DNA of 64,000 nucleotides from Macrostomum lignano. Its lineage: Eukaryota. Below are positions 5,773 to 64,000 of the stretch, in pieces; positions within the stretch are counted from its first letter, which is position 1; each line of letters starts with the position of its first letter. Below the pieces are notes generated by a model, which did no database searches, was not told the origin of the DNA, and saw nothing but the letters and a program-made list of their open reading frames with translations. The DNA lies in NCBI GenBank assembly GCA_002269645.1, contig NIVC01000108.1:186001-250000 (forward strand), given 5' to 3'. The position numbers were made by a program, and so were the translations under genes.

Positions 5773-7170
5773 ATGGCGCTGCTCCCAGACCTCCGCTCCG
5801 GCCCGCTGCTGGACGGCGAGGAATTTCAAATTGACAGCGACAGCGAGAACGGCGACGCCGACATCCCGACGCCCTGCGCGACGCCCACCGGGGAGGAGGG
5901 CGAGGCGGCAGCTGAGCCTCGCCGAGGCCTCCTGGGCCGCATCGCCTTCCTGGAGGCGGAGGCCGAGAAGCTCATTGAGCACAGCCGCGGCTGCCGCGGC
6001 CACGCTGATGAGATGCAGTCCCTGCTGGCCCGGCTGCACGACCAGAAGGCCGCCCTGCAGCGCCTGCTGGGAGCCGGCGACGCTGGTCCCGAGCTCGATT
6101 CCTGGGAGGAACCCTGCGACCTGACCGAGCACACGGCTCGGGCCTACCTGCAGTGGCTGCGCCGCCTGCTGCACGACCTGTCGCAGGCGGTGGACCAGGC
6201 GGCCAGCGGGGCCGTCCTCGCTTCCGCCAGTGCCGCAGGCGCCACCGCGCCCCGCCTGAGCGGCCGGCGTCGGCGAGACGCGCCCAGCCGGATCTTCCCG
6301 AACCTCGAGGCGCTGGACATCGCCGCTGTTGACAATGGATCCGGCGACGTCTTTCATCAGCCTGGCGAGGCCGGCGACTTGCGCGACTCGCCGGGCGAGG
6401 GCGGCACCGGCTGGGAGCCGCTGCCCCGCCAGGCGCTCTACTGTGTGGTTGGCGACGCCCGCCGCGTCACCGTCGTGGGCCTGGGTGGGCAGCTGCTAGC
6501 GCGGACGCGGCTGCGCGGCGGCGGCTGCGACGAGCAGGAGGCGGAGGCGGGCAGCAACCTGGAGCGGATCAACTATCTGCGCTGCTCCGGCCGGCTGCTC
6601 CTGTCGGACAACCAGAGCCTGTACATCTGCGACCGCTGCTGCCGCGTGCTCCGCTGCCTGCACGGCTTCAGCTGGGTTGTTGGGCACTGCGTTGACGAGC
6701 CGGCCGACCGGCTGTACATCGTGGACCGCGTCAACGAGTTCTTGTCCGTGTACGGCCTGGCCAGACTTGGGGAGCTCGACCGCCTCGCTCACCGCGACTT
6801 CACCGACGGCATCAGCTCGGTGACGGCCCTGGCCCGCACTCTGTTCGTTGCCGATCGCGGCGCCAACGCCATCTTCGCCTTCGAGACCGAGTCGCTGCAG
6901 CTGGCCTTCCGGGTGCCGCTGCGAAGCCCGCTGTTCATCACTTCAGACTGGCGCGGCGGCTGCCTCTACGTCACCGTGGGCGGCCGGGACAACACCGTGC
7001 GGATGCTGGACGGCCAGGGCCAGCTGCGCCGCTCCCTGTCCGGCGGCCGCGGCTCGCAGCCCGGACAGTTCGGCTCGCCTGGTGGCCTCACCGTCTCTCT
7101 GGACGGCACGGAGCTGTTCGTGTGCGACCTGGACAACCGGAGGGTGCAGGTGTTCGGGCTGGGGGGCTGA
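5773..7170 (+). CDS. Intronless NHL-repeat (beta-propeller) protein with an N-terminal acidic and coiled-coil region, 465 aa
   Basis: accATGG start, GC3-rich codons, NHL signature GQFGSPGGLTVSLDGTELFVCDLDNRRVQVF plus degenerate repeats (LYIVD, LFVAD, LYVT). No RING or B-box seen. Confidence 0.85.
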   Translation: MALLPDLRSGPLLDGEEFQIDSDSENGDADIPTPCATPTGEEGEAAAEPRRGLLGRIAFLEAEAEKLIEHSRGCRGHADEMQSLLARLHDQKAALQRLLGAGDAGPELDSWEEPCDLTEHTARAYLQWLRRLLHDLSQAVDQAASGAVLASASAAGATAPRLSGRRRRDAPSRIFPNLEALDIAAVDNGSGDVFHQPGEAGDLRDSPGEGGTGWEPLPRQALYCVVGDARRVTVVGLGGQLLARTRLRGGGCDEQEAEAGSNLERINYLRCSGRLLLSDNQSLYICDRCCRVLRCLHGFSWVVGHCVDEPADRLYIVDRVNEFLSVYGLARLGELDRLAHRDFTDGISSVTALARTLFVADRGANAIFAFETESLQLAFRVPLRSPLFITSDWRGGCLYVTVGGRDNTVRMLDGQGQLRRSLSGGRGSQPGQFGSPGGLTVSLDGTELFVCDLDNRRVQVFGLGG

Positions 7171-7250: not shown

Positions 7251-7627
7251 TCTAGATTAGCAATCCATTCTATTCCTGCACCCATGATAGGCTAGATTAG
7301 CAATCCATTCTATTCCTGCATCCATGATAGGCTAGATTAGCAATCCATCCTATTCCTGCACCCATGACAGGCTAGATTAGCAATCCATTCTATTCCTGCA
7401 TCCATGATAGGCTAGATTAGCAATCCATTCTATTCCTGCATCCATGATAGGCTAGATTAGCAATCCATTCTATTCCTGCATCCATGATAGGCTAGATTAG
7501 CAATCCATTCTATTCCTGCACCCATGATAGGCTAGATTAGCAATCCATCCTACTCCTGCATCCATGATAGGCTAGATTAGCAATCCATTCTATTCCTGCA
7601 TCCATGATAGGCTAGATTAGCAATCCA
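7251..7627. repeat. 40-bp satellite, locus 1 of 3 (CCATGATAGGCTAGATTAGCAATCCATTCTATTCCTGCA[C/T]), about 9 copies
   Basis: Same unit at 22106-23749 and 53515-53845. Confidence 0.97.
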
Positions 7628-11778: not shown

Positions 11779-25298
<13,520 letters not shown>

Positions 25299-38208: not shown

Positions 38209-41200
38209 TCAGTAGTAGGTCTCCCTCTCCAGCCAGTTGCCGGGCGGCAGGCGGCGCAGCAGAGTCTTGCGAATCTCGTCATAGGTGAAGATGGCCACCG
38301 AGAAGGGCAGGGCGGGCAGCCACCAGGTGAAGCGCATGGGCTGCATGCGCAGGGCCTTGTCCAGGCCGGGGCAGTAGGACATGAAGGCGGCCAGGGTGGT
38401 CTCGAAGAACAGGCCGAAGGTCATGTGGTGATTCCACATGCCCTGCTGGAAGATGGAGTTCTTGCGGGTCTTGCAGATCAGCAGGTCGGTCCACTGCACG
38501 ATCACGATGCTGGCGAAGAAGGCCGTGTGGCAGGTGTACTCCAGGCGCTTGCGCTGGGCGTAGGTCTGCGGGCGGGATGGGGCTCTGTGAGACAGACAGA
38601 CAGACAGACAGACAGATAGACAGACACAGACGAACAGGCTAGCGCAGACAGGCCAGCGCAGACAGACAAGCGCAGACAGGCACTAACCCATTCCTGTCCA
38701 TAGCTGTCCTCCAAGTCGTTGACCCCCTCGCTGTCCCACTCCTTGCGCAGGCCGAGCAGGCGGGAGGGCAGGAAGCCGTTCTCGGCCAGGATGACAAAGT
38801 ACACGAAGAAGCCGCCGCTGGCCTGGATCATGCCGATCTGGCCGTAGGCCATGCTGATGAGGCGCTCGTTAACCAGATTGTCGTGCTGCGGGTCGCGCGG
38901 CCTCCTCTTCATGATGTCGCTCTCGGCCTCCTCGTAGGCCAGGGAGATGGCGGGCACCATGTCGGTGCCGAGGTCGATGCACAGGATGGTGATGGTGCCG
39001 AGAGGCAGTGGCACGTCGGCCAGGATGAACAGCAGGAAGGGCGAGATCTCCGGGATGTTGGAGGTCAGCGTGTAGGCGATGGACTTCTTCAGGTTGTCGA
39101 AGATGATGCGGCCCTCCTCTACGCCGGTAACAATGGACGCGAAGTTGTCGTCAAGGAGAATCATGTCGGCGGCCTGCTTGCTGACGTCGCTGCCGGCGAT
39201 GCCCATGGCGACGCCGATGTCGGCCTTCTTTAGCGCCGGGGAGTCGTTGACACCGTCGCCCGTGACGGCCACGATGGCGCCCTGGCGCTGGCAGCCCTCC
39301 ACGATGATGAGCTTCTGCTGCGGGCTGGTGCGGGCGAACACGATCTCCACGTGGTGGCGCAGGATTTCGTCAATCTGGGCCGGGGTCATGTCGCGCAGGT
39401 CGCTGCCGTGGACAACGCAGGCCTGGGCCTCGCGGGGGTTCACCATGGACGGGTCCATGTTGCGATCCTTGGCGATGTCCTCGACGGTCTTGTTGGTCGG
39501 GCTGATGATGCCGACGCCCTTGGCGATGGCCTTGGCGGTGATCGGGTGGTCGCCAGTCACCATGATGACCTGCGGCGGGCGGAGAGTCGGTGAGCCGTCA
39601 TCAGCGAAGTACGAGATTCAGGAGTTGATGAGTCATCGGGATTCACGGGTCAGACGTCCCGAGTCCTGGGTCAGGATCCAAGAGTCGTGGGTCTCCAGGA
39701 TCCAAGGGTCAGGATCCACGAGTCACGGGTCAGCAGAATTTAAGGGTCAGGATTCAAGAGTCGCGGGTCAGCAGGATTCAAGAGTCACGGGTCAGCAGGA
39801 TTCAAGAGTCGCGGGTCAGCAGGATTCAAGAGTCACGGGTCAGCAGGATTCAAGAGTCGCGGGTCAGCAGGATTCAAGGGTCAGGATACAAGTCACGGGT
39901 CAGCAGAATTCAAGGGTCAGGATTCAAGAGTCACGGGTCAGCAGGATTCAAGAGTCGCGGGTCAGCAGGATTCAAGGGTCAGGATTCAGGGGTCAGGATA
40001 CAAGTCGCGGGTCAGCAGGATTCAAGGGCCAGGATACAAGTCGCGGGTCAGCAGGATTCAAGGGTCAGGATACAAGTCGCGGGTCAGCAGGATTCAAGAG
40101 TCGCGGGTCAGCAGGATTCAAGGGTCAGGATACAAGTCGCGGGTCAGCAGGATTCAAGGGCCAGGATACAAGTCGCGGGTCAGCAGGATTCAAGAGTCGC
40201 GGGTCAGCAGGATTCAAGGGTCAGGATACAAGTCGCGGGTCAGCAGGATTCAAGGGTCAGGATACAAGTCGCAGGTCAGCAGGATTCAAGGGCCAGGATA
40301 CAAGAGTCGCGGATCAGGTATAGTGGGCCCAGCTTGACCCACCTTGATACCGGCGGAGCGGCACTTCTCCACAGCGTCGGGCACGGCGGCACGGGGCGGG
40401 TCGATCATGGACATGAGGCCCACGAAGCGCAGGTTCATGAGCGGGAAGTTCTGCTCCTCGGGGTCGAAGGCGTATCCGTCAGCGTACTCCTCAGCGGGCA
40501 GGCGGAAGTCGCAGAATCCCAGCACCCGCTCGCCCATGCCGCCGAGCTCCTCGTAGGCGGTATTGAAGGCGCTCTTCCACTCGTCGTCCATGACGACGTC
40601 CTTGCCGTTGATGAGGATGTGTGAGCAGCGGTCCAGGATGCGCTCGGGGGCGCCCTTCATCACCAGCAGGAAACGCTTGTCTCCATCGTCAGTCTTGTGG
40701 ATGGACACCTGGTACTTGTTGGTGCTGTTGAAGGGCACTTCGCACACCTTGGTGTTCTTCTTGCGGTACTCGCTGACCCCGCCGATGCTGAGCTCCACGC
40801 ACTTGAGCAGGGCGCTCTCGGAAGCGTCGCCGTTGCACTCGCGCTTGAGCACGGGCTTGGACTCCTCGCCGGCCTTGAACTCGGCGCGGTTGCACAGCAT
40901 GGCGCAGCGGCTCAGGGCGATCCACTCTGGCGATGACTTGTTGTACTCGGCCGTGTTCTGCTCTTCAGAGGTGTCCGCCTCCAGGATGCGATTGTTGCAC
41001 CACATGTGGGCCACGGTCATGCGGTTCTGCGTCAGGGTGCCTGGGTGAGGGAATGCGCGGGTTGGGCTCTGTGATGCTACTGTGAGTAGTGCAGGTCAAT
41101 AGCTCAGCTTCAATACTGCAGCCAGGTGAGGTGATAATGGTGTCTAAAGCCGGGGAAAAGGAGTTGGCAATCCAGAATCTGGTGCTGGGTCTCCATGGCT

Positions 41201-53118: not shown

Positions 53119-53514
53119 GCCCCGCACGGCATAGCAGTATGCATTCTGTTGTACTATGGACAAGCCCACTGCACAGTGCGGATTTGAACCCGCCCATCCC
53201 GCGGTGCCATCGCACTTGAACTCGGCGCATTCCCATCAGCAGACTGCATGCTATAGCGGAGTGATCCAGTGGTCTGAATAATTACAATGATGCAGAGCTG
53301 GGAGGCTGGGATCGGTAGCAGCTCCCCAAAACTCCTGCTGCAGTTTTCCTGTGGACTGCGAAAATAGAAATTTCAGTTGAGGGCACTTCCGCAGAGTGGG
53401 TACTGGGCTCATTAATAATTAATTAGCAGTTGGCATCACGCCTCGGATATGAATGGGGGTCATTTTAATGCTTGTGTTGTCTTGCTGAGAAACAGCCTAA
53501 AGCTGAGACCACTC

Positions 53515-53845
53515 TATTCCTGCACCCATGATAGGCTAGATTAGCAATCCATTCTATTCCTGCACCCATGATAGGCTAGATTAGCAATCCATTCTATTCC
53601 TGCACCCATGATAGGCTAGATTAGCAATCCATTCTATTACTGCACCCATGATAGGCTAGATTAGCAATCCATTCTTTTCCTGCATCCATGATAGGCTAGA
53701 TTAGCAATCCATTCTTTTCCTGCACCCATGATAGGCTAGATTAGCAATCCATTCTATTCCTGCATCCACGATAGGCTAGATTAGCAATCCATTCTATTCC
53801 TGCACCCATGATAGGCTAGATTAGCAATCCATTCTATTCCTGCAT
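53515..53845. repeat. 40-bp satellite, locus 3 of 3, about 8 copies
   Basis: Same unit and orientation as loci 1 and 2. Confidence 0.97.
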
Positions 53846-53863
53846 CCAATAATACACCCATAA

Positions 53864-58562: not shown

Positions 58563-61175
58563 GAACTGTGGGCTACGCTATACTTTGATGACATTCTCGC
58601 CATGAAGAAACTCTTAGTCTTCGTTGCAAAAGCACATGTTGAAACAGCTTTCGTAGATTACCAGCGGGTTTCATTTACATCCTGTATGTACATGTGCATT
58701 CATTCGTGAACCTTTTGACAATTTGTGAGAAATTGCAAAATAAATGTGCCACAAAGCGTACTGAAAAGACTTGTGTTGCTACAAATTTTCAGTTGGTTTA
58801 ACTGTGCATATTTCTTTACTTACATTTTGGTTCAGCGCGGCGCTCTTACATGTGTGCCAATAGGTCATATGGAGACTCGATTCCTGCGATTCCTCGACTC
58901 CGATTATTAATTTGGGGCCTAATTGGAATCTCAGCTTGGGTCTGCTCGTACAATGGCTTTGATGGCCATCCCCAATTTAAGGCACTTTGAAGTATACATG
59001 TCCAACTAAAAAGTTAGGGTCGCTGTACACTCCTGTGCACGTGAGCTCGAGTGTGTGCCTAGCTTTAATTTAACTGCGTACGTATAATCCATTGCGATTG
59101 CATGTGCATGTACGTGCTTCGCTTGAGGGGGAGTCGGCGGAATAGGCAGTAATGCATCTCACTGGTTGTTTTAAAATGTCGCCTTAAAGGGTGCGCCAGA
59201 ATGTACATATGTACACAGCAGCTCCCATGCCTTCAACTAAAAAACCCATCGAGACTTATTGTACACTGAACCTGGAAGACTTTTACATTGCATGTATTTC
59301 GTCATACAATGGGTACGAAATTCAGCTCTGTGTTAATTCTAGGTAAATTCTAGTTACATTGACAAAAATCTCAGAAACTGAAATGTCCTGGTATGCTAGT
59401 ACTGTTTATAGTTTTATACAAACCTACGAGTTTTTAATGCAACCGTCAACAAGATACTATTGTTGCTCATGTCTTCCATTCTTATAAATTTCTTTTTTGT
59501 CTAATTTTACTTACTATTTTTACAAAGCGACTTTTAAAATTGAGCAGCGTACATGTGAAAATTACGCAGTTTATTTTACTGCTTAAAAAATTGTTCAAAT
59601 CTAACGCTATAACGAAAAAATATTTAAATGAAACAAAACCTTAATATAAAAAATTTTCTTTGTTTGTTCCACCCTCAGGAAGTCTGACTGTTTGCCTGTG
59701 CATGACTCGGACTGTATGCAACATTAATAGCCTTTCCATGCTAATGACAAGTTGACGTAAAGCCCTGCCCTAGGCCTGCTTAAACGAAGGTTAAACAAAT
59801 TGAGATTGAAATCATAATAGACCTAAATCTAAATTTTAATTTTTCTTTTCACTGTAAGAACGTTCGTTTCTGTTAAATTAACCACTAGGGCCTATGTCAA
59901 AATTCTGAGTTTTCTGTTAAGGCCCTCTTCATAAATGAGGCTAGGTCTAGGAGTAGGACTGACTAAAAACAAAGTTCTTAAAACAAAAATTTTCTTCAAA
60001 GGCTTATTTCAATGTGTTTAAAAAAAAACAGTTTTTAATGCATTGAAGCCCCTAACTATTGCTTATCAACATCCCCTTTAGGCAAATTGAAAAACAAAAA
60101 ATAAAGCCTCATATTCATGTAGATATCAGGCCTTTTAAGTTTTAGATTCTTTATCTAGTTATTATATTCAACATTTAATGGCTTTTTTCTTTCCTAATTA
60201 TTCTAAATTAATTATTATTATTAGATAATATAACACATTGTTTCTGTTGATAATCTTGAAAAAAATATATTGTACATTTTTTATTTTAATAAAAGTTCTC
60301 AGCCTAGTCTAGTTTTTGCTTAGAACCTTTTTAGAAGGTTTTTTGTAACAAACTTATAATGTAGGCCCCTAATAAATAAAACAGTTTAAAACTTAAATTA
60401 ACTAAATAGTAATTATATTCAATTTATTAATAAAGGAAATTTGTCTTACTTTTTAAACATTTAAGACATTGAAAATAATTTATAATTGGTTATTATTTAA
60501 AAAATAATTTTGGATTTTGGATTTTTATAGACCTTATAATAAGGCTTATTAAATTAAATGTTTTTTAGAATTCTAAAAATTCTTAAAAGTTAGTTTTTAT
60601 ATATTATATTATCTTCTATACATAGACATCTTTCTTAATTTATAACAATTTTTATTAATATATAAGTTTTATTTTAGTTTTTAAGTAATTTATAACAAAT
60701 GTTTTTTTGTTTATTACATTATTTTTAGGAATCATAAGTTAGAACTTTAAATAATATTTTTTAAAAAGCATTTTACAACATTATCTAACTAATTATCCTT
60801 GTTTTAAATAGTATTAAATATGTACTAGAAGAGTATATAAGTTATAATAATGGAAATTATAACTTTTATAGTAATTTTTTTGCTAAATATTCTACAGACA
60901 TTTATAGTAACATAGTTAAAATCATATGATTCAAGATAAATTTTTGGCAATAGAAACATACAATAGGCAAGTGCAAATTATATTGATATGGCAAAAATAA
61001 AATATATTTGAAATTGAATGAATGTGAAAAAATTCTCAATTTATTATTTCTAGATAATTTTGTTCCTAGTGTTTTTGTTTAAAATAGCTTTATTAATTGT
61101 AACACAAATTATATTTAAAAAAATTAAGTCAGAACAATTGTCAAATGTCCAACTCTTCATTGTGCATGCTCCGAG

Positions 61176-62369
61176 ATGGAGAAAGTGCCGATTGATGCCT
61201 CTGAGATCCTGATCCTGGCCTGTCCTCAGTGCCAGTTCATGACGCTGAAGGTGGCGTCTCTAGATGCCCACCTGAAGGAGCACAACTGCAGGATCCACGT
61301 GAAGCTGAACAAGTGCAAGCAGTGCGGCATGATCACCAACTCAGACAAGGTGATTGAGGAGCACTTGCAGATCTGGCACCCAAGCAAGGACGTGAAGGAA
61401 AACATTGCCATTGTGTTTGATGAGACTTACAACCAGGACAAGCCGGCTAGTGAGCCCAAGGCAGTGACGAATGCTGGTGGTGGTGGTGATGCTCAGAAGT
61501 CAGGAAAGTCGAGCATTGCTGGTCTGCCGCAGATCAATCTGCTGCAGCTGATGTACATGGCCCACGGACCTGTGGAGATCAACCTGCCTGGCAGTTACCA
61601 GCTGGACAGGACCAAGGACGGGGTGCACGCGTGCATCTCGTTCATGCCGAGCTTCTTGAACCGGACTGTCGGTGAGAACTTCATGGAGAGTCTGAAGCAG
61701 GATCTGTCGTGGAAGCAGCTGACTTTGACAACAAAGGACGGCAAGGAGCGTCAGGAGCCTCGCCTGACCTGCTATGTCGGTCCTGACTTTGAGTATTGTG
61801 GCAACAAGTTCGAGAACTGCAACGACTGGAACCCGAAGCTGAAGGATCTGAAGGAGATCGTAGAGAAGGCGGTTGGGCGGGAGTTCAACGCAGTGATTTG
61901 CTACATGTACCGCAACGGCAGGGACAGCCTTGGGTGGCACTGCGAGAAAGAGAAGCCGCTTGGTGAGCACCCGTACATTGCGGCTGTGAGTTTGGGCCAG
62001 GCCAGGTACTTGGAGTTCTCGAGAAAAGGGCGCGAGGATCGCTACGTGAGACTGCGCTCTGCTCACGGAGACCTGGTGGTCACGGAGGGCGCGATCGAGG
62101 ACCTGTACATCCACCGGATTCCCAAGGATCCGATGGCCCGTCGCACGAGCTACACGTTCTCATTCCGGTACATCAACCCGGTGAAGAAGGCGGAGGAGGT
62201 CCCGAAGGTCGCCGAGGCGCCGGCCAAGGCCGCCCCGGAGTCGTCGGAGAAGCTGGCCGAGGCTCCGAAGGCGGAGCCGGCTGCCACTGAGGAGACCTCC
62301 GCGACCCCGTCTGGCAAGAAGGGCAAGAGCCCCGGCCCGGTGGGCAGCGGCAAAGGCAAGAAGAAGTGA
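61176..62369 (+). CDS. Intronless fusion of two C2H2 zinc fingers and an ALKBH2/ALKBH3-type 2OG-Fe(II) oxygenase domain, with a Lys/Ala/Pro/Glu-rich tail, 397 aa
   Basis: CPQC-x12-HLKEH and CKQC-x12-HLQIWH. AlkB motifs QEPRLTCYVG, FNAVICYMYRNGRDSLGWHCE, IAAVSLG, HGDLVV, HRIPK, FSFR. GC3-rich codons. AATAAA at 62510. Confidence 0.92.
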   Translation: MEKVPIDASEILILACPQCQFMTLKVASLDAHLKEHNCRIHVKLNKCKQCGMITNSDKVIEEHLQIWHPSKDVKENIAIVFDETYNQDKPASEPKAVTNAGGGGDAQKSGKSSIAGLPQINLLQLMYMAHGPVEINLPGSYQLDRTKDGVHACISFMPSFLNRTVGENFMESLKQDLSWKQLTLTTKDGKERQEPRLTCYVGPDFEYCGNKFENCNDWNPKLKDLKEIVEKAVGREFNAVICYMYRNGRDSLGWHCEKEKPLGEHPYIAAVSLGQARYLEFSRKGREDRYVRLRSAHGDLVVTEGAIEDLYIHRIPKDPMARRTSYTFSFRYINPVKKAEEVPKVAEAPAKAAPESSEKLAEAPKAEPAATEETSATPSGKKGKSPGPVGSGKGKKK

Positions 62370-63258
62370 GCGGTGCCGGTCGGCCCTGCCGGATGCTGCG
62401 GACTGCTGAGCTGCCGGTGTGTTTTGTTAATTCGCTTGCTTGTTGTTTAAAGATAAGTTTTGACAGTCGAGCTAGTTGTTGAACAAAAGCATAAATCCTC
62501 AAAGTTATTAATAAAGTTTAAGCAATCTTCATTTTCTTTATACGCTTTTTTGTTAGCTCCATTTTCTGTTTTTCTATTGAATTACTTAGTAAGTTGGTTT
62601 GCGTCCTCTCATTGCCTTCAATATTACTAAGCAACAGGTCGCACGCTAGTCAAGAAGCAGGACTGTTCCTCCCTGGCCACCTTTATGAGTCGCTGCAACT
62701 ATCCATTCAATGTACTAAATTGTTTTTCCGTATTCAAAAATTCTCAGCTTTGTCGCTTTTTTATTTATCAATCGTAACTTTAAGGTTCGCTTTTGTTTGC
62801 TAGTGAGCTGGCCTGGTGGCTGACTCGGGTCTTGTTTTTTCTATGCAGGTCTGTTGCGCAATATTATCAATAAGAGACTAATAAATCAACCACAGCTGCA
62901 ATCAGCTTCCAGTACCCGTTTTGGGTCTGTTCTCTCTGCAATGTTTAGCTTGCTAAATTAAAGTACATTTGTGTGTAGTCGCGCGCTCCTACCCAGTCTC
63001 CGATCATTGCGATTGGGAGTTTTCTACTACTAAATAGTTTTTGTTCTAATAATATCCGCTGTAGCGGAGCCCGGCTCGTGTGAGACGCCGACCGCTTGGC
63101 GCCTCGCTAGGGCGCCATCGGTTTGCGCCTCAATTTATTAGCGTTGGCTCATTTTGGAATCGCTGTTTTGAAGCTGTTGGATCTTGCAATAAAATAGGAA
63201 ACAGTCCTGGTTTAAGCGCGTCGCATTTCTGTGTTGTTTATTTTGCGGTAGAACATGG

Positions 63259-63724
63259 TTCCATAAGCAGGACTCTGAAGTGTTATGCTGAGGCTGTAGC
63301 TAAGCAGGACCCTGAAGTGTTATGCAGAGGCTGTAGCTAAGCAGGACCCTGAAGTGTTATGCTGAGGCTGTAGCTAAGCAGGACCCTGAAGTGTTATGCA
63401 GAGGCTGTAGCTAAGCAGGACCCTGAAGTGTTATGCTGAGGCTGTAGCTAAGCAGGACCCTGAAGTGTTATGCTGAGGCTGTAGCTAAGCAGGACCCTGA
63501 AGTGTTATGCTGAGGCTGTAGCTAAGCAGGACCCTGAAGTGTTATGCTGAGGCTGTAGCTAAGCAGGACCCTGAAGTGTTATGCTGAGGCTGTAGCTAAG
63601 CAGGACCCTGAAGTGTTATGCTGAGGCTGTAGCTAAGCAGGACCCTGAAGTGTTATGCTGAGGCTGTAGCTAAGCAGGACCCTGAAGTGTTATGCTGAGG
63701 CTGTAGCTAAGCAGGACCCTGAAG
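63259..63724. repeat. 37-bp minisatellite GTGTTATGCTGAGGCTGTAGCTAAGCAGGACCCTGAA, about 12 copies
   Basis: Direct reading. Confidence 0.96.
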
Positions 63725-63817
63725 TTTAATAAAGTTTCTATGTCACAATGGCACAGGCTTTCGCATAACAACGCAGTAAGGTTATTTGCTTCATCCAATT
63801 ACAGATTCGACGTAAAG

Positions 63818-64000
63818 ATGGAGAAAGTCCCGATTGATGCCTCTGAGATCCTGATCCTGGCCTGTCCTCAGTGCCAGTTCATGACGCTGAAGGTGGCGTC
63901 TCTAGATGGCCACCTGAAGGAGCACAACTGCAGGATCCACGTGAAGCTGAACAAGTGCAAGCAGTGCGGCATGATCACCAACTCAGACAAGGTGATTGAG
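63818..64000 (+). CDS. Second tandem copy of the zinc finger-AlkB gene, truncated by the window end
   Basis: First 61 codons match 61176-61358 except GTG>GTC (silent) and GCC>GGC (Ala>Gly). Confidence 0.9.
   Translation, partial: MEKVPIDASEILILACPQCQFMTLKVASLDGHLKEHNCRIHVKLNKCKQCGMITNSDKVIE

What the first reader, a model, noticed from the sequence alone, without database searches (positions are those of the whole stretch)
61176..62369. Zinc finger-AlkB fusion with a rewired 2OG/Fe site
Seen: two spaced C2H2 fingers precede an ALKBH2/3-type domain. HxD reads H-C-E, the NxY position reads CYMY, the distal His is kept (HRIPK), and RxxxxxR reads SYTFSFR with the first Arg lost. The tail is histone-H1-like with a terminal KGKKK. 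Established: ALKBH2/3 are DNA/RNA N1-meA and N3-meC demethylases without C2H2 fingers, and these residues bind Fe(II) and 2-oxoglutarate. Inference: a nucleic-acid-targeted reader of methylated bases, or an oxygenase with a changed co-substrate; a candidate undescribed epigenetic or RNA-modification factor, present in at least two copies.
Basis: partly seen in the sequence, partly recalled or inferred. Interest (0 to 1): 0.82.

Follow-up and report, generated by a model that had tools for sequence, protein, structure and literature searches.

The report
Flatworm zinc-finger ALKBH3 with altered cofactor pocket
A flatworm (Macrostomum lignano) gene joins two zinc fingers to a DNA/RNA-demethylase-like (ALKBH3) domain that has lost the arginine that normally holds its co-substrate yet is strongly conserved, so it is a real, undescribed variant of a known repair enzyme and is either no longer an ordinary enzyme or works in a changed way.

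Summary
Window 61176..62369 (+) is an intact, intronless 397-aa ORF with two C2H2 fingers, a disordered linker, an ALKBH3-type domain and a disordered charged tail. The domain matches human ALKBH3 by sequence (E 2e-29) and by predicted fold (TM 0.94). Mapped on human ALKBH3, the site reads N179Y, Y181 kept, H191 kept, D193E, H257 kept, R269S, N271T, R275 kept.

The window is Macrostomum lignano contig NIVC01000108.1. The gene is a tandem pair, one long-tail and one short-tail copy, present at three loci. All six ORFs are intact and carry the same variant site.

Selection is strongly purifying. dN/dS is 0.03-0.11 among the copies. An older paralogue (P0003) is 94% identical in protein while its synonymous sites are saturated.

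The finger-ALKBH3 architecture is a small clade: three M. lignano gene families plus two unidentified ENA organisms. The non-lignano relatives and one lignano paralogue keep the canonical HxD/H/RxxxxxR, so the altered pocket is derived and lineage-specific. It is unique among the 150 nearest representatives of 1.84 billion proteins.

I found no literature on it. The function is inferred: most likely a finger-guided binder of single-stranded nucleic acid that keeps its metal site but not canonical 2OG turnover. An oxygenase with a different way of holding its co-substrate remains a serious rival. The "histone-H1-like" tail is compositional only.

The parts
61176..62369 (+). Complete intronless CDS (397 aa plus stop) of the long-tail finger-ALKBH3 paralogue
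   Evidence: 100% identical to NIVC01000108.1 of M. lignano Mlig_3_7. GC3 is 79%.
61221..61283 (+). C2H2 finger 1 (C16, C19, H32, H36)
   Evidence: Canonical Cx2Cx12Hx3H spacing. Ligands invariant in 4 homologues. Profile hit to the BCL11A finger pair. Strand/helix elements at 14-15, 22-23 and 26-35 in the model.
61314..61379 (+). C2H2 finger 2 (C47, C50, H63, H68)
   Evidence: Cx2Cx12Hx4H spacing. Ligands invariant. Helix 57-67 in the model.
61419..61505 (+). Disordered linker (aa 82-110) holding the conserved YNxDKP motif. The relatives in L001 and L003 carry a third C2H2 finger in this stretch, which is absent here.
   Evidence: pLDDT below 50 for aa 82-110. Alignment A2. L003 reading frame.
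61563..62183 (+). ALKBH3-type double-stranded beta-helix domain (aa 130-336)
   Evidence: PDB ALKBH3 E 2e-29. pLDDT block means 92-98 for aa 131-330. Foldseek 8jnk_A TM(target) 0.94, rmsd 1.7 A.
61902..61910 (+). Y243-M244-Y245, the NxY position. N179 equivalent is Y; the 2OG-binding Tyr is kept.
   Evidence: Asn193/Tyr195 of ALKBH5 line the 2OG pocket (PMC3985658).
61938..61952 (+). H255-C256-E257-K258-E259. The metal ligands read HxE instead of HxD. The acidic residue equivalent to ALKBH3 E195 is kept.
62112..62114 (+). H313, the distal metal-binding His (HRIPK)
62148..62168 (+). S325-Y-T327-F-S-F-R331, the RxxxxxR motif. The first Arg (the 2OG C5-carboxylate anchor) is replaced by Ser and the Asn by Thr. 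The second Arg is kept.
   Evidence: Roles of the two arginines from PMC3985658 and PMC544882.
62184..62366 (+). Disordered A/K/E/P-rich tail ending in KGKKK
   Evidence: Composition and net charge +4. pLDDT block means 52-70. Not shared with the tandem copy.
62510..62515 (+). AATAAA, a candidate polyadenylation signal 141 nt after the stop
   Evidence: Read directly from the sequence. Inference only.
63190..63818 (.). 37-nt minisatellite that separates the two tandem gene copies
63818..64000 (+). First 61 codons of the tandem second copy (the short-tail, 353-aa form), cut off by the window end
   Evidence: 99% identical to 61174-61358. One synonymous and one A31G difference. Full copy seen in L006 at 5634 onward.

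Best explanation
Shown:
- This is a Macrostomum lignano gene of a small, undescribed family that fuses an N-terminal pair (ancestrally a trio) of C2H2 zinc fingers to an ALKBH3-type Fe(II)/2-oxoglutarate dioxygenase domain.
- In one M. lignano subfamily (this tandem gene pair at three loci, plus paralogue P0003) the cofactor pocket has been remodelled: D193E, R269S, N271T/A, Q308E and W311Y, on top of the clade-wide loss of N179.
- The metal ligands (H, E, H), the Fe-proximal Arg (R275 equivalent), the 2OG-contacting Tyr (Y181) and the nucleic-acid-contacting residues (R131, Y143 and E195 equivalents) are all kept.
- The whole domain is under strong purifying selection.

Inferred:
- Canonical enzymes remain in the same genome (P0005/P0156 without fingers, P0006 with fingers).
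- The arginine that anchors the C5 carboxylate of 2OG throughout the superfamily is gone, and the pocket has become more acidic.
- The protein therefore most likely no longer turns over 2OG in the canonical way.
- It would act as a metal-containing, zinc-finger-guided binder of single-stranded DNA or RNA through the retained ALKBH3 base-flipping cleft. That could mean recognising or shielding N1-meA/N3-meC-type or related bases, or competing with or partnering the active paralogues.
- The disordered charged tail would add non-specific nucleic-acid or nuclear-targeting affinity.
For: Identity and fold.

Residue mapping and rarity. The combined Y-Y-H-E-H-S-T/A-R signature occurs only in this gene and P0003 among the 150 best of 4193 hits.

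Derived state: the nearest relative L001/P0002 groups with this gene at 100% bootstrap and has HSDDE, HRVPK and RCRINFTFR. P0004/L003 and P0006 are also canonical.

Function retained:
- Six intact ORFs at three loci.
- dN/dS 0.03-0.11 among the copies.
- Against P0003, 94% amino-acid identity but 76% nucleotide identity, pS 0.86, dN 0.068.

Role of the lost Arg: it binds the 2OG C5 carboxylate. The second Arg sits next to Fe, and substituting it abolishes ALKBH3 activity (PMC3985658; PMC544882).

Retained substrate-side residues: R196 = R131, Y207 = Y143 and E259 = E195, from the alignment. R131A is inactive and E195 is the conserved active-site acid.

Precedent in the same subfamily for loss of catalysis: P0003 carries an additional AlkB-like domain with every catalytic residue gone.
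Against: - Keeping all three metal ligands, with Asp changed to the only other carboxylate residue, plus the Fe-proximal Arg and the 2OG Tyr over a long divergence, is what one expects if metal chemistry still matters. A pure binder might be expected to lose them, as the dead domain of P0003 did.
- An Arg two residues upstream of the lost one (R323, also present in L001) lies on the same face of the strand and might reach the C5 carboxylate.
- No binding, activity or expression data were accessible.
- The finger specificity (DNA, RNA or protein) is unknown.
Confidence: 0.45

Rival explanations
1. It is still an active Fe(II) oxygenase on nucleic acid with a changed way of holding its co-substrate. 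Either 2OG is anchored by another basic residue (for example R323), or a different, less acidic 2-oxoacid is used.
For: - HxE...H, the R275 equivalent and the Y181 equivalent are all retained under strong purifying selection.
- HxE is a legitimate facial triad in other 2OG oxygenases such as the JmjC enzymes (my own knowledge).
- JmjC enzymes anchor 2OG with a Lys from a different strand (PMC3985658).
- From memory, the R258Q variant of deacetoxycephalosporin C synthase loses 2OG use but accepts aliphatic 2-oxoacids.
- One other representative (P0140) combines HxE with an intact Arg.
Against: - Loss of the C5-anchoring Arg/Lys is very rare among the closest relatives: 4 of 142 aligned, including this gene and P0003.
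- I know of no natural AlkB-family enzyme that uses another 2-oxoacid.
- Three changes (R to S, Q to E, D to E) make the pocket less favourable for a dianion.
- Canonical paralogues exist in the same genome to supply the ordinary activity.
Confidence: 0.3
2. It has moved to a different chemistry that does not need 2OG, for example a lyase-type or metal-only activity on nucleic acid, or a protein-directed activity.
For: ALKBH1 is reported to have an AP-lyase activity independent of Fe(II) and 2OG (cited in PMC3985658). The domain is highly constrained as a whole.
Against: No specific sequence feature supports it. The retained residues are exactly those of the oxygenase and base-flipping apparatus.
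Confidence: 0.1
3. It is a decaying duplicate or annotation artefact with no function. The substitutions would simply be the first steps of pseudogenisation in a repeat-rich polyploid genome.
For: The window is 35% minisatellite, the genome is a neopolyploid (PMC10733133), and several annotated gene models at these loci are mis-spliced across the two copies.
Against: - Six of six ORFs are intact.
- Synonymous changes outnumber non-synonymous ones 10:4, 8:1 and 5:1.
- There is 94% protein identity to a paralogue whose synonymous sites are saturated.
- The fold is predicted with pLDDT block means of 92-98 across the domain.
Confidence: 0.03

Closest known systems
Human ALKBH3 (ABH3/PCA-1), PDB 2IUW, 8JNK, 8JNR, 9NCZ
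   Same: - Best sequence match (E 2e-29, about 31-32% identity over aa 130-336) and best fold match (TM 0.94, rmsd 1.7 A).
- Shares H191, H257, R275, Y181, E195, R131 and Y143.
   Different: - ALKBH3 has no C2H2 fingers.
- ALKBH3 has D193, R269, N271 and N179 where this protein has E, S, T and Y.
- This protein has a long disordered charged tail and an N-terminal extension (NLLQL...PVEINLPG) shared only with its flatworm-type relatives.
M. lignano P0006 (BOX15_Mlig015948g2, UniRef A0A267FMZ1), ENA P0002/L001 and P0004/L003: canonical finger-ALKBH3 proteins
   Same: - Same architecture: a finger pair with all 8 ligands aligned, then an ALKBH3 domain and a charged tail in some members.
- Same clade-wide loss of N179 (I/T).
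- L001 shares the YNxDKP and PVEINLPG.Y.LD.TKDGV motifs.
   Different: - They keep HxD, the distal His and RxNxTxR.
- L001 and L003 have a third finger.
- Their genes have introns (L001 at least 3, P0006 2), whereas this gene has none.
- None has been characterised.
M. lignano P0003 (BOX15_Mlig021122g3, PAA82062.1)
   Same: Its C-terminal AlkB domain is 94% identical in the core (89% over the full 241-aa BLASTP alignment) and has the same HCE / CYMY / S-x-A-x-x-x-R pocket.
   Different: - 708-aa model: two fingers, a fully degenerate AlkB-like domain, then the variant domain.
- A retroelement (RT/RNase H ORFs) sits inside the annotated intron.
- GC3 is 50% against 79% here.
Non-catalytic members of other Fe/2OG oxygenase families (the pseudo-enzyme concept; recalled from general knowledge, not tested here)
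   Same: An oxygenase fold retained under selection while a cofactor-binding residue is lost.
   Different: Here the metal triad is retained and only the 2OG anchor is lost. I know of no described AlkB-family example.

Membership tests
AlkB / ALKBH3 subfamily of Fe(II)/2OG dioxygenases | Sequence membership of Pfam 2OG-FeII_Oxy_2 above the gathering score | tested here: met
   51.6 bits against a cut-off of 31.2, E 1.8e-13. ALKBH3 E 2e-29, ALKBH2 8e-08.
AlkB / ALKBH3 subfamily of Fe(II)/2OG dioxygenases | Double-stranded beta-helix fold with nucleotide-recognition lid, superposable on ALKBH3 | tested here: met
   AF2 pLDDT block means 92-98 across the domain. Foldseek TM(target) 0.94, rmsd 1.7 A to 8jnk_A. 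The top 10 hits are all ALKBH3.
AlkB / ALKBH3 subfamily of Fe(II)/2OG dioxygenases | HxD...H Fe(II) facial triad | tested here: inconclusive
   H255 and H313 are present, but the Asp is Glu (E257). A carboxylate ligand is kept, but HxE occurs in only 3 of the 150 closest representatives.
AlkB / ALKBH3 subfamily of Fe(II)/2OG dioxygenases | RxxxxxR: first Arg anchors the 2OG C5 carboxylate, second Arg lies next to Fe | tested here: not met
   First Arg is Ser (S325). The second Arg is kept (R331). R occupies this position in 138 of 142 aligned representatives. Roles from PMC3985658 and PMC544882.
AlkB / ALKBH3 subfamily of Fe(II)/2OG dioxygenases | NxY in strand beta-I lining the 2OG pocket | tested here: not met
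   Asn is Tyr (Y243); the Tyr is kept (Y245). However, the Asn is also lost in the canonical members of the finger clade (I, T, I).
AlkB / ALKBH3 subfamily of Fe(II)/2OG dioxygenases | Substrate-side residues (ALKBH3 R131, Y143, E195) | tested here: met
   R196, Y207 and E259 align with them. Their importance is described in PMC3985658.
AlkB / ALKBH3 subfamily of Fe(II)/2OG dioxygenases | 2OG-dependent oxidative demethylation of m1A/m3C | not testable with these tools
   Needs a biochemical assay.
Classical C2H2 zinc finger | Cx2-4Cx12Hx3-5H ligand spacing, conserved hydrophobic core position and beta-beta-alpha fold | tested here: met
   - Both fingers have the spacing.
- All 8 ligands are invariant in A3.
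- The profile hits the BCL11A and CTCF fingers at E 1e-7 to 1e-5.
- Matching secondary structure in the model.
- Caveat: the single protein is below the Pfam cut-offs, although the L003 relative passes them.
Finger-ALKBH3 clade (undescribed; defined here) | N-terminal C2H2 pair joined to an ALKBH3-type domain, grouping together in a domain tree | tested here: met
   - Only 5 of the 150 best representatives carry fingers.
- NJ bootstrap: window + P0003 + L001 100%, with P0004 added 86%, with P0006 added only 40%.
- P0006 is tied in mainly by the aligned finger pair.
Linker histone H1 C-terminal tail | Homology to H1, or a strongly basic K/A/P tail | tested here: not met
   No Pfam hit on the tail. 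9 Glu in 61 residues, net charge only +4. Tail not conserved between tandem copies.

The most novel reading that the evidence does not exclude
A naturally evolved AlkB-family protein in which the 'eraser' fold has been converted, under strong selection, into something else. It could be a zinc-finger-targeted reader or protector of methylated or unpaired bases, or an Fe oxygenase that no longer depends on 2-oxoglutarate as ordinarily bound. Either would be the first such case in the AlkB family. It sits in a genetically tractable regenerating flatworm that also keeps the canonical paralogues for comparison.
Probability: 0.35. Interest if true: 0.8.

Novelty: new variant of a known kind. Interest (0 to 1): 0.55.

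Why it matters
AlkB-family proteins are the known erasers of m1A, m3C and m6A in DNA and RNA. All characterised members share HxD...H and the 2OG-anchoring Arg.

This gene is a selectively maintained member that keeps the metal site and the base-binding cleft but has lost the 2OG anchor, and it is fused to zinc fingers. It therefore offers a natural experiment on two questions:
- Whether an eraser fold can become a reader or regulator.
- How co-substrate dependence can change.

The same genome supplies the controls: a canonical finger-bearing paralogue and a canonical finger-less ALKBH3. M. lignano is amenable to RNAi and transgenesis.

It also records an undescribed domain architecture, C2H2 + ALKBH3, which suggests sequence- or structure-targeted demethylation in some flatworm-type animals. 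The practical reach is limited by the narrow taxonomic distribution.

Tried and rejected
1. A word-indexed homologue search with the whole protein found only 2 hits. The same search with the N-terminal finger profile found only the L001 exon-1 ORF, and with the reconstructed L001 protein it found no further finger-bearing members. The family is sparse in public data, or the index is insensitive.
3. The two ENA assemblies (ERZ25070786, ERZ3792534) could not be assigned to an organism: no paper cites them and their contigs carry only retroelement genes.
4. The ALKBH3 structure paper under my recalled PMC id is not held. Two residue-name literature searches returned nothing. Residue roles were taken from the ALKBH5 structure paper and a 2005 AlkB survey instead.
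5. Model coordinates are not exposed, so I could not measure whether R323 or another residue can replace the lost Arg.
6. An exact-sequence look-up of the 397-aa protein found no called gene, so I obtained no transcript-level contigs or expression evidence.
7. Transposon or viral origin of the AlkB domain was considered and rejected. There are no element genes next to the window copies, and the nearest relatives are animal-type ALKBH3.
8. The antisense 204-aa ORF at 61500..62114 was considered and rejected as a by-product of the GC3-rich sense frame. It was not tested separately.
9. A shared ancestral intron position between L001 and P0006, as support for retrogene origin, was checked. The positions differ, so this remains only a possibility.
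Full report
**1. What is there**

Window 61176..62369 (+) is an uninterrupted 397-aa ORF. It is GC-rich (58% GC, 79% GC3) and sits between AT-rich flanks and minisatellites.

Pfam places aa 156-318 in 2OG-FeII_Oxy_2, at 51.6 bits against a cut-off of 31.2. Against all PDB sequences the best matches are four human ALKBH3 entries (E 2e-29 to 4e-28, aa 130-336). ALKBH2 is far weaker at 8e-08.

An AlphaFold2 model built on 150 homologues has pLDDT block means of 92-98 across aa 131-330. The two finger modules score 66-80. aa 82-110 and the C-terminal 60 residues are low-confidence. Foldseek against the PDB returns ALKBH3 chains as the top ten hits, with TM (target-normalised) 0.94 and rmsd 1.7 A for 8jnk_A.

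**2. The fingers**

The fingers are C16-x2-C19-x12-H32-x3-H36 and C47-x2-C50-x12-H63-x4-H68.
- Alone they fall below the Pfam C2H2 cut-offs.
- Aligned with the N-termini of three homologues, all eight ligands are invariant.
- A profile of that alignment matches the BCL11A finger pair across both fingers at E 1.4e-7, and also CTCF and other classical fingers.
- The fingers of the L003 relative pass Pfam thresholds.
- The model places strand/helix elements where a beta-beta-alpha finger needs them.

**3. The active-site residues**

I used the ALKBH3 alignment, where chain index +48 gives the UniProt number. This offset reproduces H191, D193, H257 and R275.

| Human ALKBH3 | This protein | State |
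|---|---|---|
| N179 | Y243 | changed |
| Y181 | Y245 | kept |
| H191 | H255 | kept |
| D193 | E257 | changed |
| E195 | E259 | kept |
| H257 | H313 | kept |
| R269 | S325 | changed |
| N271 | T327 | changed |
| R275 | R331 | kept |
| R131 | R196 | kept |
| Y143 | Y207 | kept |

Residue roles come from the literature:
- The first Arg of RxxxxxR, with the beta-I Tyr, binds the C5 carboxylate of 2OG.
- The second Arg lies next to Fe, and substituting it abolishes ALKBH3 activity.
- An Asn two residues before that Tyr lines the 2OG cavity.
- R131A of ALKBH3 is inactive.
- E195 is the conserved acidic residue at the active site (PMC3985658; PMC544882).

**4. How unusual the site is**

An exhaustive phmmer scan of 1.84 billion representatives gave 4193 hits, but only five below 1e-30. 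In an alignment of the best 150:
- Position 179 is N in 140.
- Position 193 is D in 145, and E in 3.
- Position 269 is R in 138 of 142, and S in 3.
- Position 275 is R in 141.

The combined signature Y-Y-H-E-H-S-T/A-R occurs only in this gene and in P0003.

Compared with the nearly invariant columns of that alignment, the protein also differs at Y205F, M303T and Q308E, and has W311Y. M303T and the loss of N179 are shared with all finger-bearing relatives. D193E, R269S, N271T/A, Q308E, W311Y and Y205F are specific to this M. lignano subfamily.

**5. Organism and copies**

The window is 100% identical to contig NIVC01000108.1 of assembly GCA_002269645.1. That assembly is Macrostomum lignano Mlig_3_7 (PMC10733133).

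The gene is the first of a tandem pair.
- The second copy starts at 63818 and is cut by the window end.
- In the full contig it is an intact 353-aa form that diverges after about codon 343 into a short, unrelated tail.
- The same long + short pair is present at two further loci (NIVC01000625.1, NIVC01002283.1).
- All six ORFs are intact (397/397/398 and 353/353/355 aa) and all carry WHCEKE and SYTFSFR.

**6. Selection**
- Among copies, synonymous differences dominate: 10:4, 8:1 and 5:1. Nei-Gojobori dN/dS is 0.03-0.11.
- Against the older paralogue P0003, the 217-codon domain is 94% identical in protein but only 76% in DNA. The proportion of synonymous differences is 0.86, which is saturated and inflated by a codon-usage shift. 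dN is 0.068.
- The variant pocket has therefore been preserved for a long time. This excludes a decaying pseudogene.

**7. The family**

Only five clusters among the top 150 carry C2H2 fingers.

| Member | Source | Architecture | Catalytic motifs |
|---|---|---|---|
| This gene | M. lignano | 2 fingers + ALKBH3 domain + tail | variant |
| P0003 | M. lignano (Mlig021122) | 2 fingers + dead AlkB-like domain + variant domain | variant |
| P0006 | M. lignano (Mlig015948) | 2 fingers + ALKBH3 domain | canonical: HSD, H, RINLTFR |
| P0002/L001 | ENA ERZ25070786 | 3 fingers; gene has introns | canonical: HSDDE, HRVPK, RCRINFTFR |
| P0004/L003 | ENA ERZ3792534 | 3 fingers; the real ORF starts at L003:80 | canonical |

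M. lignano also has a finger-less canonical ALKBH3 (P0005/P0156, Mlig032459).

A neighbour-joining tree of the domain groups window + P0003 + L001 at 100% bootstrap. Adding P0004 gives 86%, and adding P0006 only 40%.

Because the sister L001 is canonical, the altered pocket is derived in the M. lignano lineage. The third finger of L001 and L003 corresponds to the disordered linker here.

**8. Mechanism**

*Shown:* an ALKBH3 fold; the metal triad kept as H/E/H; the Fe-proximal Arg, the 2OG Tyr and the substrate-side residues kept; the 2OG C5 anchor and two pocket Asn lost; the pocket made more acidic (R to S, Q to E); strong constraint; canonical paralogues present in the same genome.

*Inferred:* canonical 2OG turnover is unlikely. 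I consider a finger-guided, metal-containing binder of single-stranded nucleic acid the most likely reading (0.45).

The main rival is an oxygenase that holds 2OG differently or uses another 2-oxoacid (0.30). R323, two residues upstream on the same strand face and also present in L001, is a candidate replacement anchor. This rival is favoured by the conservative D-to-E change and by the retention of every other piece of the catalytic apparatus.

A different chemistry (0.10) and a non-functional duplicate (0.03) are less likely.

**9. The tail**

The tail is A/K/E/P-rich: 13 K, 12 A, 9 E and 8 P in 61 residues, net charge +4. It is modelled at low confidence (block means 52-70), has no Pfam match, and is not conserved in the tandem copy. 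L003 has a comparable K/E/S-rich tail. 'Histone-H1-like' is a compositional resemblance only.

**10. Novelty**

I found no paper linking Macrostomum to ALKBH proteins or describing a C2H2-AlkB architecture. Database names for the paralogues are automatic: 'hypothetical protein', 'C2H2-type domain-containing protein' and 'Fe2OG dioxygenase domain-containing protein'.

I rate it a new variant of a known kind. The fold and family are known. The fusion and, above all, the selectively maintained loss of the 2OG anchor are not.

Interest is 0.55. It is surprising to a 2OG-oxygenase or epitranscriptomics specialist and directly testable, but it is taxonomically narrow and has no functional data.

Noticed in passing
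window 1-64000: About 35% of the window (22.5 kb, 42 arrays with TRF score of at least 200) is micro- or minisatellite, with periods of 4 to 132 nt. Many long 'ORFs' in the six-frame list are simply translated repeats.
   Followed up: partly
window 7252-7627, 22104-23751, 53509-53848: The same 40-nt minisatellite unit (CTAGATTAGCAATCCATTCTATTCCTGCA[TC]CCATGATAGG, in rotated register) forms three separate arrays tens of kb apart. A related pair of 30-nt G-rich arrays lies at 15362-16751 and 19398-20241.
   Followed up: no
window 61174 vs 63816; L002 10007 vs 13474: Similarity between the two tandem gene copies begins exactly at AG|ATG and ends inside the tail (about 62214). Their upstream and downstream flanks are unrelated. 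Within-locus copy identity (99.4%) exceeds between-locus identity of the same copy type (98.6-98.8%). This suggests gene conversion confined to the CDS, which might also explain the high GC3 (79% against 50% in paralogue P0003).
   Followed up: partly
L004 8010-12139 (NIVC01000499.1, gene of P0003): The annotated 708-aa paralogue consists of a two-finger exon, an 'intron' containing reverse-transcriptase/RNase H-like ORFs (a retroelement insertion), then one long exon. That exon encodes a fully degenerate AlkB-like domain (24% identity, all catalytic residues gone) followed by the variant AlkB domain. It looks like a fused former tandem pair.
   Followed up: partly
window 61176-62369 vs L001 2545-4275 and L005 5001-8148: The window gene is intronless, whereas its relatives have introns (L001 at least 3, P0006 2, at different positions). 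A retrogene origin for the M. lignano subfamily is possible but unproven.
   Followed up: partly
window 38505-39563 (-): ORF fragment with P-type ATPase domains (Cation_ATPase_C E 1e-18, HAD hydrolase). It is probably one exon of a cation-transporting ATPase gene and abuts a 24-132-nt minisatellite at 39668-40317.
   Followed up: no
window 5773-7167 (+): A 465-aa ORF with a weak NHL-repeat match at its C-terminus (E 5e-6). Not examined further.
   Followed up: no
window 61500-62114 (-): A 204-aa antisense ORF lies inside the gene and is also present in the other copies. It is most simply a by-product of the GC3-rich sense frame. Not tested.
   Followed up: no
L002 10001-14347, L006 3001-6695, L007 3001-6274: The public gene models at all three loci are spliced across the two tandem copies or are frameshifted (products of 292, 350 and 264 aa). 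The true 397-aa and 353-aa proteins are therefore not in the protein databases as such.
   Followed up: partly
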